Shown here: piece by piece, positions 9,446 to 16,638 of the stretch
Layout: each line of letters begins with the position of its first letter
Numbering within the stretch: the first letter of the stretch is position 1
Assembly: GCA_002269645.1 (NCBI GenBank)
Contig: NIVC01000672.1
Location: 419,029 to 483,028 of the forward strand
Length of the DNA stretch: 64,000 bases
Reading direction: 5' to 3'
DNA from: Macrostomum lignano
Lineage: Eukaryota
The notes under the pieces: model-generated
What the model saw: the letters and a program-made list of their open reading frames with translations, nothing else
What the model was told of the DNA's origin: nothing
Database searches by the model: none
Made by a program: the position numbers and the translations under genes

Positions 9446-9585
9446 TCATGACAGTTCAACTGTAAATTTACCGTTATCCTCGTCAAGAAAGAATTTGTCA
9501 GTTGTCTGCACAATCCAGTACGGCAGAGGCACTTTAATATCTTTCTTGCTTTGTTCCTCAAAGTTCTGATAAGCCGTTGAAAAGC
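9446..9585 (-). CDS. Distal part of the gene 1 pseudo-caspase exon (its C-terminal p10 strand), detached by the LINE insertion
   Basis: Reads FSTAYQNFEEQSKKDIKVPLPYWIVQTTDKFFLDEDN(G). It continues ORF 15479..16741 (...KNGFSTA) across the 15-bp TSD. PYW..TTDKFFL matches the C-termini of the other three caspase domains. Phase-1 donor G|GTAAAT at 9472|9471. Confidence 0.88.
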
Positions 9586-10045
9586 ACGCGAAGGCGTATT
9601 CAGCATGCCAGTGAAGTATGAGACAGACTAGGCCCATGGGCTAAGGTCTGCGATGCTTCACGCCTGCCCCTATCTTCAGCAGGTCAAGGCTGGTGGGAGG
9701 TCTGCACCCTCTATTTGCCTCTGGCAGCCGCAGACCCCCCCCCCACGCTGTCTCGCAAGTCGACCCAGGGTACTCGTCCCCGCGTGTGTTCAAGGCAGTC
9801 CCTAGGGCTGCTGGACAGACTGGGCTCCGGCGCTGGCGACCCTATCCAGTGGCTTCGGCCGAATTTGGGTATGCGGGTCTGGCTCGCCAACCTGCAGGCC
9901 GTGGTACTGCTCAACGTACTCTCTAATGCCTAAGGTGTTGACCGTGCCGATGGGCTGGAAGGCCGGGGAGTAGTCCGGTCGCAAGCGGTCCCCCTCCTGG
10001 TGTCGGGCCAGCCTTGAGGGTGCTATTGGCCTACTGCCCGGTCAG

Positions 10046-11623
10046 GTGGAGCGGCCGGGTGGGTACCGCGCCCCTTTGAGGGTAGCCCACCAACCTTTTA
10101 TCATGGCCTTCGAGCCGACTATGGATAAACAAGCTATTTCTAGGGACGGGGACCCTTCTAAACCCCAACCTCAGTCCGAAGGACCGGCCGGCCCTGCTGG
10201 CAGATCCCAACCGACTGATTCAACTGTGGCAAAGGAAGGACCGGCTGGCTCTGCTGGCAGATCCGACCAGAGCTACCAAACTCAAAATACCCTAAGACCT
10301 GCCAGCTCCGCTGGTGGATCTAAGGGAACCGCGAGCTCTGAGCCTAAAGGACCGGCCAAATCTGGCAGATCCGATGAAGCTCAGCGGGCTCGGCTTGAGC
10401 GCAAACGCGCTAAACAACGCGCCAAAAGGCAGGCCAAGAAGGGAGCTGCGGGGGCCAAAGCGGCGGCGTCCACCATGGATGCTGAAGCGACTGGAGTCCC
10501 AAGGCAACCAGGCGGGCCGGCCGGTGGAAGCTCCAGTAGTTCAGCGGCGGCGCTCCCTGGAGCTGCTGCCGCGGCTGCTGAGGCCGAAACCACGGCGCAA
10601 CAAATGGCCACTGCCAACAAGGAGGTTCCTTCGGGAGCTACCTTTGCGGCGAAGGCCAAGGCCAAAATCCCGGGAGTGATCATCCAAGGTCGCGACCAGG
10701 ACTGGACCACTGATCAGCTTCAAAAAGTGTGGAGTGCTGTTGACTCCTATCTGATTGAGCTGACTGTCGAGGAGGGAATCTCCATCGGCGTTGAGCGGAT
10801 GGTGCTGCGAAGCACATTCGTTCTTATTGCTCCTAGCAGCGAGGAGGACGCTCGGCGGCTGCTCCAGCGGCTACCGACGGTCTCCTTGGATGCTGACCTT
10901 GGTGGAGCTCTTTTTCTTCGCGAGGGCCAGCGTCCAAAGACGATACCCTATGTGGTTTTCGTCCCTGCTAAGAGCACCGCAGCTGGACCAGACGTTATTC
11001 GCCGGGTCCTACTGCGTCTGAACCCCGACCTCCCTGCTAGTGGACTGGTGTATCACCGCAAAGTCCGCAGGGGGGAGACGGGCAACTCAATTGTCCTCGG
11101 CCTTTCCAGCACTTGGGCGAGTCGGTACCCTAATGGATCCTCTTTCCAGCTGGGTGCCCTCAAGCTCAAGTTGCGCCGAGGAAAGTCTGCCAAAGGGAAG
11201 GCTACTGCCAACCCCGGCATCTCCGGCAAGAGCGGGGCGCAGTCTAAGGCCCAAGGAAAGGCGCAAGCCGATCCCAAAGCCAAAGCTGCATCTCGCCCCT
11301 CTGCTAGCAGCAGTTCGGCGACCGCGGTAACGGCTCCGGCCGAGCCCCGGGAACCAAACCTGCCAGTCGGAGAAGGAGTTGAGGACGAGGCCGGGTCTTC
11401 GGAATCCGAGCTCTCCTCGGCCACCTTGGTGGGGTCTGAAGGTAAAGATGCAGGTGAGGAAGCTTCCTCCATCCTGTCATCGGAGCCTGAGGACTCTGCT
11501 GGGGGGCCGGTGGGGGTGAGGAGGCCATGGACGTCGACCAACTCCCATCTCCCAGTCAAGCCCCAGCGGCCTGGGACGAGGACGATCTGTTGTCCAAGTC
11601 TCCTTGATGGCCCTGGGCTCTAG
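10046..11623 (+). CDS. LINE ORF1 (probable nucleic-acid chaperone; no CCHC knuckle seen)
   Basis: 525-codon ORF upstream of ORF2, with low-complexity ends and a globular core (TFAAKAK...GALKLKLRR). Resemblance to the DUF4780-type ORF1 of LOA elements is my inference. Confidence 0.75.
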   Translation: MERPGGYRAPLRVAHQPFIMAFEPTMDKQAISRDGDPSKPQPQSEGPAGPAGRSQPTDSTVAKEGPAGSAGRSDQSYQTQNTLRPASSAGGSKGTASSEPKGPAKSGRSDEAQRARLERKRAKQRAKRQAKKGAAGAKAAASTMDAEATGVPRQPGGPAGGSSSSSAAALPGAAAAAAEAETTAQQMATANKEVPSGATFAAKAKAKIPGVIIQGRDQDWTTDQLQKVWSAVDSYLIELTVEEGISIGVERMVLRSTFVLIAPSSEEDARRLLQRLPTVSLDADLGGALFLREGQRPKTIPYVVFVPAKSTAAGPDVIRRVLLRLNPDLPASGLVYHRKVRRGETGNSIVLGLSSTWASRYPNGSSFQLGALKLKLRRGKSAKGKATANPGISGKSGAQSKAQGKAQADPKAKAASRPSASSSSATAVTAPAEPREPNLPVGEGVEDEAGSSESELSSATLVGSEGKDAGEEASSILSSEPEDSAGGPVGVRRPWTSTNSHLPVKPQRPGTRTICCPSLLDGPGL

Positions 11624-11646
11624 CCAGATATTGCATTTAATACAGT

Positions 11647-14600: not shown

Positions 14601-15385
14601 TTCTGGCCATCAGCTCCTGCACTGCAGAGCTTCTCGCCACTGGCGTTACTGGTAAGAACATCATTTTCCATTCGGACAGCCAAGCTGCCTTGCACGCCAT
14701 CAGTGGCTGCAGCACCAACTCTGCTACAGTCCTTGACTGTATCAAACTCCTCAATGTGTTGGGTTCCGCCAACAAAATTACCCTTAAGTGGGTTCCGGGG
14801 CATGTGGGGATCCGAGGAAATGAGTTGGCTGACACCCTTGCAAAAGTTGGTGCCTCCGGCTCCTCTCTCGGCCCCGAACCTCTTGTCCCGATTCCTGGCT
14901 GTGTCATCGACTCGCGCATCAAAGCGTGGATCAGGACTCAGCACCGCTCGACTTGGGCGAACCGCACGAACTGCAGGCAATCCAGAGGCGCTGTCCCTCA
15001 GCCCTCTCACCAGCTCCGGAAGCTCCTCTTGCGCCTCTCGCGCAGAGACATCCGGGCTGCCACCATGACCCTCTCTGGTCACGGCTGCTTCTCCAGGCAC
15101 CAGTACCTGCAGGGCAACGCCACCAACGCCACCTGTAGTTTCTGCAACTCAGGTGACGAAACCGCTGAGCATTTCGTCAGCATCTGTCCCGCCTTCACGC
15201 GGGCCAGACTCACTTACCTCGGGCCACACACATCTATTACTGAAGCGTGCAAACCCGAAAACTTTAATCAGCTCATGCGCTACCTTCGGGCCACCCGCAG
15301 GGCTGAACTCTCCTTTCCAGAGAGCACCATAGCTGCTGGCGACACTGGGGGACCTCCCTGGGCGGCGCCAACCCTCCGTCCATAG
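11647..15385 (+). CDS. LINE ORF2: AP endonuclease, reverse transcriptase, RNase H and C-terminal CCHC, with two frameshifts (~12020, ~12810)
   Basis: APE: QINLQH, IQEPW, GGDLNAHH, LSDHC. RT: SPGPDGI, FRPISL, LDIVGAFD, PQGGVLTP, YADDV. RNase H: YTDGSK, NEVLAI, SDSQAAL, VPGHVGIRGNELAD. C-terminus: CSFC...ETAEHFVSIC. Confidence 0.95.
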
Positions 15386-15480
15386 CGACGCGTCGGCCGT
15401 TCAGGGACTAGCGGAATGGGCGCCCGCGCCTTCCCGCTGTGTCCCCTCCGGGACAGCCCTGCAGCTAAGTCAAGTAAGTC

Positions 15481-16638
15481 AAGCCGTTGAAAAGCCGTTC
15501 TTGACGATGCTGTTGATGGGGCAGATCATTGAAGCCACATCCGTTTTCCCGGCACCGAAGTAAATTGCTGAGCACAGAGCGAGCACGAAGCGGCTACCCA
15601 GGGGGGAACAACCATCAGCAGGGGTTGATTCAGATCTGACTATGATCAGACCGCTTTGTTTGTGAAAGTGCAAGGCATTAGTTGTACCTTCAGACCCTAA
15701 ATCAGTAACTTCTCCTGTAGTTCGATTATTTAATATGTTTCCAGCTTCACCAGAAGCATTGAAGCGTTTTCGCAGATGAACAACAACCAGCCTGTGCGCG
15801 TTAGAAAAACAACCTTCTTTGCTAATTTTAGTCAGCAGGTCGTTAACTGCTTTTTTTTCGGTCTCTTCCGCCAGGATTACTACCACATAGGAGGCACCGA
15901 ATTCCTCTGACGGCTTGATGTCATATTTATCAAAATATTTCACGGATTTAGTTTCGCACTGGTCAGGTGATTTGTATTTGGCGTGCTCAAGTGCATCTTG
16001 CAGATTTGCAACGTCCATCCTTGCACTTCTGCCCAAATCAGATGTGTCTTCGTGTAGCGTTTTGCTCACAAGAATGAGAGCGCGATTCTTGTGCTCTTCG
16101 TAATTATTGTAGATTTCTGGGATTTTTTCTTTCAGACGATTCCTCGAAAACTTAAACCCGGGTTCGCCGGTAATATAGTAGAATTGTTCCGTTTTAGAGC
16201 TGTTATTAAAATTTCCAACTGCGTCTTTCAGATTTTCGTTTTTATCTAACATGTCTTTGATCGCTTTCAGCTCACTTCCATCTGTGTCTTCTTTGCCTGC
16301 TTGACATAGGAAATTCACTTTTGTTAATTTTTGTTTATCCTTTTCGTCACGCAGCTTCTCTCTCAGCTTCTTGCTTCCACAAACAATCAGAAGTCTTTCC
16401 GACTGATCACTTCCGCAACTATCGAATGCCTCGAATAGATTCTTCAGTCCATCATTGAGTTTACTACTGCTAGAATGCACTACAAGAACTGCTTGCTTGA
16501 GTGCTTTGGTAGCTTCGACCACTTCCTTACATTTACCAATGTCACCAGTTTCCTCCAACTGAAAATTGCAGTCCCTCAGGTACTGTTTGAACTTCTCACA
16601 GTTTATCTGGTCGATATTAAATAAGAATGCCTTCCTGT
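15481..16638 (-). CDS. Multi-caspase gene 1, proximal part of the exon encoding a degenerate N-module and a catalytically dead pseudo-caspase (interrupted by the LINE)
   Basis: Acceptor tgcatttcAG (16640-16639), phase 1. Motifs RALILVS...MDVANLQDALEHAKY...YVVVILAEE (no His-Gly)...RLVVVHLRK (no Cys)...GSRFVLALC...DVASMICPIN. Confidence 0.85.

What the first reader, a model, noticed from the sequence alone, without database searches (positions are those of the whole stretch)
9571..15495. Full-length LINE inserted inside a caspase coding exon; removing it restores the reading frame exactly
Seen: the 15-bp TSD (aagccgttgaaaagc) encodes the ...FSTA segment on the minus strand. The empty site reads KNGFSTA-Y-QNFEEQ...KFFL. 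The filled allele reads KNGFSTA-TGA, the stop being formed by the last TSD base plus the first two antisense bases of the LINE tail. This haplotype can therefore only make a truncated dead-caspase protein lacking its last beta strand and the whole active domain, unless the LINE is spliced around. The tail unit ends in AAG and the TSD begins with AAG, consistent with microhomology-primed TPRT. The perfect TSD and absence of in-frame stops in ORF2 suggest a young, possibly polymorphic knockout allele.
Basis: seen in the sequence. Interest (0 to 1): 0.72.

Follow-up and report, generated by a model that had tools for sequence, protein, structure and literature searches.

The report
LINE insertion breaking a flatworm caspase gene
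A 5.9-kb jumping gene (a LINE retrotransposon) sits inside a protein-coding exon of a caspase-family gene of the flatworm Macrostomum lignano and stops its translation; this is a clean but ordinary case of a gene disrupted by a mobile element.

Summary
A perfect 15-bp direct repeat (9571-9585 and 15481-15495) flanks a 5,895-bp insert (9586-15480). The insert is an APE-type LINE on the + strand: 5' UTR, ORF1, ORF2 (endonuclease, reverse transcriptase, RNase H), a conserved 3' UTR and a (TAAGTCAAG)n tail. Joining the flanks restores a 461-codon open frame on the minus strand that is colinear with two M. lignano paralogues. The filled allele reads ...KNGFSTA-TGA.

The interrupted domain gets no Pfam hit. 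A profile-profile comparison shows it is a caspase-like domain without the His/Cys catalytic pair (98.9%, E 1e-17). A GT..AG intron joins it to a downstream exon that carries a catalytic-type Peptidase_C14 domain.

One detail is wrong: ORF2 is not open throughout. As assembled, two 1-nt deletions (about 12015 and 12812) split it into three frames. They could be real mutations or consensus errors at short base runs.

"Full-length" is supported by a related element with the same anatomy. "Young" is only weakly supported: perfect TSD, and 95.5-98.3% amino-acid identity to other M. lignano copies. "Polymorphic" could not be tested, because no other assembly or reads were reachable.

This is a new member of a known kind, of low to moderate interest.

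The parts
9571..9585 (.). Left copy of the 15-bp target-site duplication AAGCCGTTGAAAAGC. On the minus strand it is host coding sequence (...FSTA).
9586..15480 (+). LINE (non-LTR retrotransposon), 5,895 bp, antisense to the host gene.
   Evidence: Domains. Boundaries from the TSD. Its 5' end coincides with the start of the related element contig L001.
9586..10102 (+). LINE 5' UTR. A block at 9616-9657 (GTATGAGA..GGCCCA.GGGCTAAGGTCT.CGATGC) is conserved with L001.
10103..11623 (+). LINE ORF1, counted from the first ATG. The open frame runs from 10046 and is 525 codons, the same length as ORF1 of L001. It has no Pfam domain and no CCHC knuckle.
11647..12015 (+). ORF2 segment 1: N-terminal half of the APE endonuclease. 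This frame stops at 12070-12072.
12005..12020 (+). Frameshift site 1 (GCTCCGAGAG). The window copy is 1 nt short relative to relatives P0003 and P0004.
12016..12812 (+). ORF2 segment 2: C-terminal half of the endonuclease plus the linker, in a second frame.
12803..12818 (+). Frameshift site 2 (ATAAAAAAGATGATGG, at an A6 run). The window copy is 1 nt short relative to M. lignano copy P0005, which reads AMIKKDDGSLTKDPEEVLQHMLS in one frame.
12813..15385 (+). ORF2 segment 3: reverse transcriptase (YADD), RNase H (DGS, HSDS, PGH..GNELAD) and a C-terminal CX2CX8HX4C motif. Open to the stop codon.
15386..15465 (+). LINE 3' UTR. TAGCGGAATGGGCG...CCGCTG and CCCTGCAGC are conserved with L001, and two hairpins are predicted.
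15466..15480 (+). Tail: TAAGTCAAG followed by TAAGTC. The second unit is completed by the AAG at 15481-15483, which is the first 3 nt of the right TSD copy.
   Evidence: L001 ends in CAGCTAAGTCAAAG.
15481..15495 (.). Right copy of the target-site duplication.
15479..15481 (-). Junction stop codon TGA, made of the last TSD base plus two antisense tail bases. It ends the host frame after ...KNGFSTA.
15482..16718 (-). Host exon A, upstream part: an N-terminal region plus most of the pseudo-caspase domain. The 5' limit is a putative AG acceptor at 16719-16720, not verified by RNA.
9472..9585 (-). Host exon A, downstream part (YQNFEEQSKKDIKVPLPYWIVQTTDKFFLDEDN): the last beta strand of the pseudo-caspase domain.
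9058..9471 (-). Host intron, GT..AG, phase 1. It joins exon A in frame to exon B.
   Evidence: The paralogue P0001 is continuous across this junction.
7582..9057 (-). Host exon B: a Cys-rich linker, a 22-Ala run and a Peptidase_C14 domain with THG and QVCRN, followed by the stop codon.

Best explanation
A non-LTR retrotransposon of the RNase H-bearing I group integrated by target-primed reverse transcription into a paralogue of a Macrostomum lignano gene family. Each member of that family encodes a catalytically dead caspase-like domain followed by a catalytic-type caspase domain.

How it most likely happened (inferred from the anatomy):
- The element's endonuclease nicked the gene's coding (minus) strand between window positions 9570 and 9571, in empty-site terms.
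- The freed ...GGCTT-3' end could pair with the ...AAG-3' end of the LINE RNA tail and prime cDNA synthesis.
- A second nick 15 nt away on the other strand produced the 15-bp duplication (12-15 bp, depending on where the shared AAG came from).

Consequences:
- The element lies antisense to the gene, 38 codons before the end of exon A.
- The gene's frame runs into a TGA at the junction.
- This allele can therefore encode only the N-terminal region plus a pseudo-caspase domain that lacks its last strand. It cannot encode the downstream caspase domain unless unusual splicing bypasses the insert.
- The copy itself is full-length in extent but, as assembled, carries two 1-nt deletions in ORF2, so it is probably no longer autonomous.

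Shown here: the TSD, the element's anatomy, the frame restoration, the junction stop and the domain identities. Inferred: the TPRT steps, loss of function, and a recent date.
For: - The TSD is exact and non-random.
- EN, RT and RNase H domains and ORF1 are present.
- The related element L001 has an ORF1 of the same length (525 codons), a near-identical spacer (24 nt against 23 in the window copy) and an uninterrupted 1232-aa ORF2. Its 5' UTR block and 3' UTR/tail are conserved with the window copy.
- Joining the flanks gives a 461-codon open frame that is colinear with paralogues P0001 and P0002 across the site.
- The junction stop is TGA.
- The GT..AG intron is in frame with exon B, which matches Peptidase_C14 at E 4e-32.
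- The exon-A domain aligns with the caspase family over 218 columns: hhalign 98.9%, E 1.1e-17.
- Exon A's C-terminus matches the p10 end of caspase domains in P0124 and P0125, of exon B (E 3e-7) and of the neighbouring gene (E 1e-7).
- Other M. lignano copies of the family are 95.5-98.3% identical in amino acids.
- Both host exons are still open over 2.9 kb.
Against: - No RNA evidence exists for the gene model or for the fate of the transcript.
- The 5' exons and the start codon of the host gene were not established.
- The exact locus has no annotated protein in the collections searched. The gene could already have been a redundant or decaying family member, and a partial duplicate lies next to it.
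- Two frameshifts in ORF2 argue against a very recent insertion of an active copy, unless they are assembly errors.
- No second copy with its flanks was available to confirm the family's ends or target preference.
Confidence: 0.85

Rival explanations
1. The insertion is old and fixed, in a family member that was already redundant or decaying. It would then be a pseudogene with a dead LINE, not a young or segregating knockout.
For: - ORF2 has two frameshifts.
- The gene belongs to a local cluster with a partial duplicate and an intact neighbour of the same architecture.
- No intact-allele protein was found in 5.8 billion proteins.
- A perfect 30 nt of TSD is still compatible with a few per cent divergence (arithmetic, not a tool result).
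Against: - The TSD is perfect.
- The host exons on both sides remain open over about 2.9 kb.
- The element is 95.5-98.3% identical in amino acids to other copies.
- Both frameshifts are single-base losses at short base runs and could be consensus errors.
Confidence: 0.35
2. Assembly artefact: a repeat-induced misjoin placed a LINE between two unrelated exon fragments.
For: The published M. lignano assemblies are long-read based, redundant and very repeat-rich (PMC12801592 describes the assembly as still quite redundant). No reads could be inspected here.
Against: A misjoin would not create a 15-bp duplication whose removal restores a 461-codon frame colinear with two paralogues. It would also not end exactly at the element's conserved 5' start and at its tail.
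Confidence: 0.03
3. The insertion is tolerated because the transcript bypasses it. A cryptic donor in exon A could be spliced to the exon-B acceptor, or an alternative isoform could be used, so that an active caspase is still made.
For: - Paralogue P0002 shows that alternative 5' exons are spliced into the middle of exon A in this family.
- The exon-B acceptor is phase 1 and could accept other donors.
Against: - Every known isoform still includes the interrupted segment.
- Exon B has no Met before the catalytic region.
- There are no RNA data.
Confidence: 0.1

Closest known systems
I-group non-LTR retrotransposons (clades I, Nimb, Ingi, Loa, Tad1, R1, Outcast), for example the Drosophila I factor
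   Same: - Two ORFs.
- ORF2 has an N-terminal APE endonuclease, an RT and a C-terminal RNase H. RNase H in this position is reported for the I group (PMC4640811).
- There is a Cys/His motif after the RNase H.
- The 3' end is a short tandem repeat rather than poly(A). The I factor's (TAA)n tail is cited from my own knowledge.
- The TSD is of the 10-15 bp class.
   Different: - The best full-length relatives are unnamed contig proteins at 57-59% identity.
- The clade was not resolved by RT phylogeny.
- ORF1 has no CCHC knuckles and no Pfam domain.
- The tail unit is the 9-mer TAAGTCAAG.
'Stringent-type' LINEs with a conserved 3' stem-loop and repeat tail (eel UnaL2, L2 clade; Kajikawa and Okada 2002, from my own knowledge)
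   Same: - The 3' UTR motif and terminal repeat are conserved between two families that share only 57-59% ORF2 identity.
- Hairpins are predicted.
- The tail repeat overlaps the target by 3 nt.
   Different: - It belongs to a different clade, one with RNase H.
- The fold is not significantly more stable than shuffled sequence (z = -1.26).
- There is no functional test.
Disease-causing or de novo LINE-1 insertions in coding exons (for example L1 in factor VIII exon 14, Kazazian 1988, from my own knowledge)
   Same: A LINE with a TSD lies inside a coding exon and truncates translation, which predicts a null allele.
   Different: - The clade and the host differ.
- The copy is full-length in extent rather than 5'-truncated.
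- There is no phenotype or population evidence.
- The gene belongs to a redundant family in a hidden polyploid.
Pseudo-caspases such as cFLIP that pair with active caspases
   Same: The interrupted domain is caspase-like but lacks the catalytic His/Cys pair. It accompanies a domain that has both.
   Different: - Here the dead and live domains lie in one polypeptide, in tandem. P0125 and the neighbouring gene at 32067-28745 share this layout.
- There are no DED or CARD prodomains.
- The function is unknown.

Membership tests
APE-type non-LTR retrotransposon (LINE) | Apurinic-endonuclease-like domain at the N-terminus of ORF2 | tested here: met
   Exo_endo_phos matches at E 2.7e-4 and 2.7e-7, and Exo_endo_phos_2 at E 3.6e-20. 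The domain is split by a frameshift near 12015.
APE-type non-LTR retrotransposon (LINE) | Reverse transcriptase domain with a YxDD motif | tested here: met
   RVT_1 matches at E 5.3e-28. YADD is at residue 273 of the 845-aa ORF.
APE-type non-LTR retrotransposon (LINE) | No terminal repeats; a 3' tail; flanked by a target-site duplication | tested here: met
   The TSD is 15 bp and the tail is (TAAGTCAAG)n. The two ends are unrelated when read directly. No dedicated terminal-repeat scan was run.
APE-type non-LTR retrotransposon (LINE) | Full-length and coding-competent (autonomous) copy | tested here: not met
   The extent matches L001: ORF1 525 codons, 23-24 nt spacer, conserved 5' and 3' ends. 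ORF2, however, is in three frames as assembled.
I group of LINEs (I/Nimb/Ingi/Loa/Tad1/R1/Outcast) | RNase H domain downstream of the RT | tested here: met
   RNase_H matches at E 7e-11, residues 541-669 of the RT ORF. The distribution of RNase H among clades is taken from PMC4640811.
I group of LINEs (I/Nimb/Ingi/Loa/Tad1/R1/Outcast) | RT phylogeny places the element inside a named clade | not tested
   No reference set (Repbase/RTclass1) was available. The nearest proteins are unnamed.
Caspase (Peptidase_C14) gene | Peptidase_C14 domain with catalytic His and Cys | tested here: met
   Exon B matches PF00656 at E 4e-32. THG and QVCRN are read and align to the SHG and QxCR columns of the family.
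Caspase (Peptidase_C14) gene | The interrupted exon itself encodes a caspase domain | tested here: met
   There is no Pfam hit. hhalign against the family alignment gives 98.9%, E 1.1e-17 over 218 columns. The AlphaFold model was too poor to use (pLDDT 35).
Caspase (Peptidase_C14) gene | The interrupted domain is catalytically competent | tested here: not met
   In the hhalign alignment the His-Gly position reads AEETE, and the Cys position falls at a gap next to R (VVVHL-RKR).
Young or polymorphic insertion allele | An empty site exists in other haplotypes, lines or homeologues | not testable with these tools
   No other assembly or reads were reachable. P0001 is not on record as DNA. No near-identical protein exists in the collection.

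The most novel reading that the evidence does not exclude
The LINE family is currently or very recently mobile in laboratory Macrostomum lignano, and this insertion is a segregating, line-specific natural knockout of one member of a flatworm-specific family of tandem pseudo-caspase plus caspase genes. In that case the two ORF2 frameshifts would be assembly errors. The element would be a candidate endogenous insertional mutagen in a transgenesis-capable model. The allele would give a ready-made loss-of-function for an undescribed caspase architecture.
Probability: 0.25. Interest if true: 0.45.

Novelty: new member of a known kind. Interest (0 to 1): 0.3.

Why it matters
This is a textbook-clean example of target-primed reverse transcription hitting a coding exon: exact TSD, exact frame restoration and a junction stop codon.

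- It defines the ends and anatomy of an uncharacterised RNase H-bearing LINE family in a regeneration model whose LINEs have hardly been described.
- It flags gene models in the public M. lignano proteome that are chimeras with this LINE.
- It draws attention to a small family of tandem dead-plus-live caspase genes.
- If the allele segregates, it is a natural knockout.

None of this would surprise a specialist in mobile elements.

Tried and rejected
- **Other copies in the window.** blastn and tblastn of the element against the rest of the window found none. Family ends, TSDs and target preference could therefore not be compared locally.
- **Metagenome scans.** The conserved 3' UTR pattern gave no match. 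The tail pattern gave five matches, all unrelated sequence with no LINE 3' UTR upstream.
- **DNA of relatives.** P0003's sample file was too large and P0001 is not on record. Only L001 was obtained.
- **Structure prediction.** AlphaFold2 on exon A with a 4-sequence alignment gave mean pLDDT 35 and pTM 0.25. It was unusable, so no fold search was run and hhalign was used instead.
- **Exhaustive HMMER search.** The pseudo-caspase domain found only 4 proteins. One of them (P0123) is a low-complexity false match.
- **Pfam on ORF1.** Nothing was found.
- **RNA fold of the 3' UTR.** Two hairpins are predicted, but they are not more stable than shuffles (z = -1.26). I make no structural claim beyond sequence conservation.
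- **Misassembly.** I considered it and rejected it; see the rival explanations.
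Full report
**1. The observation**

The 15-mer AAGCCGTTGAAAAGC occurs exactly twice in the 64-kb window, at 9571-9585 and 15481-15495. Even with one mismatch allowed, 0.02 matches are expected by chance. The bases next to the two copies differ (ctgat/acgcg on the left, aagtc/cgttc on the right), so the repeat is exactly 15 bp. The insert is therefore 9586-15480, 5,895 bp. It stands out by composition: 54-60% G+C against about 42-47% around it.

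**2. What the insert is**

All parts lie on the + strand.
- The 5' UTR is about 0.5 kb.
- ORF1 is a 525-codon open frame at 10046-11623, with its first ATG at 10103. It has no Pfam match.
- A 23-nt spacer follows.
- ORF2 starts at the ATG at 11647. Its products match Exo_endo_phos and Exo_endo_phos_2, RVT_1 (E 5e-28) and RNase_H (E 7e-11).
- The RT has YADD and the RNase H has its acidic and His residues (DGS, HSDS, PGH..GNELAD). A CX2CX8HX4C motif follows.
- The element ends ...CCCTGCAGC-TAAGTCAAG-TAAGTC. The next three bases, AAG, which begin the right TSD copy, complete the second 9-mer.

An APE endonuclease plus RT plus a C-terminal RNase H in an animal points to the I group of non-LTR retrotransposons (PMC4640811). 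I could not run an RT phylogeny, so the clade is left open.

**3. Is it full-length?**

The best full-length relatives in 5.8 billion proteins are two unnamed ORF2 proteins of 1232-1235 aa at 57-59% identity. The contig of one of them, L001, has the following features:
- an ORF1 of exactly 525 codons;
- a 24-nt spacer;
- an uninterrupted 1232-aa ORF2.

Aligned with the window, the first base of L001 falls at the LINE's 5' boundary, and a block of the 5' UTR is conserved. The 3' UTR (TAGCGGAATGGGCG..., CCCTGCAGCTAAGTCAA) is also conserved up to the tail. So the window copy has the full extent of the family.

**4. ORF2 is not intact**

- The frame that starts at 11647 stops at 12070.
- tblastn of P0003, P0004 and P0005 shows the protein continuing in a second frame from about 12016 and in a third from about 12813.
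- At both sites the window copy is one base short: GCTCC-GAGAG at the first, and ATAAAAAA-GATGATGG next to an A6 run at the second.
- M. lignano copy P0005 reads straight through the second site.

Single-base losses at short base runs are also what long-read consensus errors look like, so I cannot say whether they are real. As assembled, the copy is not autonomous.

**5. Organism and family age**

The only relatives of the host protein are two Macrostomum lignano UniProt entries, P0001 and P0002. Three M. lignano gene models (P0005, P0006, P0014) contain pieces of this LINE family at 95.5-98.3% amino-acid identity over 405-741 residues. The window is therefore M. lignano or something very close to it, and the family has several copies a few per cent apart. 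No other copy is present in the window.

**6. The host gene (minus strand)**

- Joining 9585 to 15496 gives one 461-codon open frame...VASMICPINSIVKNGFSTA|YQNFEEQSKKDIKVPLPYWIVQTTDKFFLDEDNG.
- P0001 and P0002 are colinear across the site...INSIVKNGFSNKLCANFADQNVENNLLLPYWIVQTTDEFFLDEDNA.
- A GT donor follows DEDN at 9471. An AG acceptor at 9058 joins it in phase 1 to a 1.5-kb exon (9057-7582).
- That exon matches Peptidase_C14 at E 4e-32 and has THG and QVCRN. P0001 is continuous across the same junction.

The interrupted exon has no Pfam hit, but several comparisons show what it is.
- Its last 68-90 residues match the p10 end of the exon-B caspase (E 3e-7), of the neighbouring gene's upstream caspase domain (E 1e-7), and of caspases P0124 and P0125 in an exhaustive search of 1.8 billion representatives.
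- A profile-profile comparison of the whole 236-residue domain with a caspase alignment gives 98.9% probability and E 1e-17 over 218 columns.
- In that alignment AEETE stands where the family has SHG, and a gap next to R stands where it has the catalytic Cys.

The same tandem layout is seen in P0125 and in the neighbouring gene at 32067-28745.

**7. Consequence**

In the filled allele the frame reads ...KNGFSTA and then TGA (T15481, G15480, A15479). The 38 codons that are lost include LPYWIVQTTDKFFL. That segment aligns with the final strand of the caspase p10 subunit, which forms the dimer interface in caspases (general knowledge). Everything downstream is lost as well, including the catalytic domain. 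Loss of function is an inference, since no RNA data were available.

**8. Mechanism**

The LINE is on the + strand. First-strand synthesis was therefore primed from the minus strand, nicked at GGCTT^ATCAG. The primer's CTT-3' end can pair with the AAG-3' end of the tail repeat. A second nick 15 nt away accounts for the TSD. Because of the shared AAG, the duplication is 12-15 bp, and the empty-site reconstruction is the same either way. This fits TPRT with short microhomology, but one copy cannot establish a preference.

**9. Age and polymorphism**

A perfect 15-bp TSD (30 nt compared) would still be likely at 1-2% divergence, so it is weak evidence. The host exons are open over 2.9 kb, and the element is close to other copies. 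Against youth stand the two frameshifts.

No intact-allele protein exists in the collections, and no reads or other assemblies could be reached. Polymorphism is therefore untested. M. lignano is described as a hidden allotetraploid with a redundant assembly (PMC12801592). The gene also sits in a cluster with a partial duplicate (21544-20732; 83% identity over 2.4 kb) and a paralogous neighbour. A knockout of one copy may therefore cost the animal little.

**10. Verdict**

The insertion is real, and a misjoin cannot explain the TSD together with the exact frame restoration. It is an ordinary kind of event, documented unusually cleanly, involving an undescribed LINE family and an undescribed caspase architecture. 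I rate it a new member of a known kind, with interest 0.3.

Noticed in passing
window 35313-45723: A young LTR retrotransposon of 10.4 kb on the + strand. Its 999-bp LTRs are 99.8% identical with TG..CA ends and TATA on both flanks. It carries gag (zf-CCHC, 36302-37579), RT (38443-39105) and integrase (40145-44077).
   Followed up: partly
window 28745-32067 (minus strand): A second gene with the same tandem layout. The upstream exon (32067-30556) has a weak Peptidase_C14 match (E 3.7e-7) without the catalytic pair. The downstream exon (30106-28745) has a strong match (E 1.7e-28) with SHG and QSCRH. Both exons are open.
   Followed up: partly
window 20732-21544 and 20843-23149: A partial duplicate of the 5' two-fifths of exon A plus its upstream region: 83% identity to 16100-18461. 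It breaks off after ...EIDNFYNNY. Upstream leader segments recur again at 32693-33942.
   Followed up: partly
window 14652-14924 (inside the LINE): Three M. lignano gene models (P0005, P0006, P0014) are chimeras of host genes with this LINE family. All of them jump from ...ATGVT to AWIRTQ.... In the window copy this corresponds to an in-frame 273-nt GT..AG interval with a G|GTAAGA donor, which removes the later RNase H catalytic motifs (HSDS, PGH..GNELAD). It could be real splicing or a predictor artefact.
   Followed up: partly
window 51594-58072 (minus strand): ORFs with Helicase_C (58072-56744) and DNA_pol_A (54527-51594) in that order, which looks like a DNA polymerase theta-like gene. They lie in unusually G+C-rich DNA (60-69%) with internal minisatellites.
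   Followed up: no
window 463-7275, 25806-26767, 48355-49515: Dense minisatellite and microsatellite arrays: 21-mers x47 and x38, (TGAG)n of 0.8 kb, a 57-mer x14, a 25-mer x54 starting about 300 bp after the caspase gene's stop, another 25-mer x39, and (CAGA)n of 1.2 kb.
   Followed up: no
window about 8340-8410 (exon B, minus strand): Exon B carries a run of 22 alanines between the Cys-rich linker and the caspase domain. The run is absent from paralogues P0001 and P0002.
   Followed up: no
L001 1-6492 (Logan contig from ERR14788467): An apparently intact relative of the LINE: ORF1 of 525 codons and ORF2 of 1232 aa, 59% identical. It has the same 5' UTR block and the same 3' end (CAGCTAAGTCAAAG). 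The source organism is unknown.
   Followed up: partly
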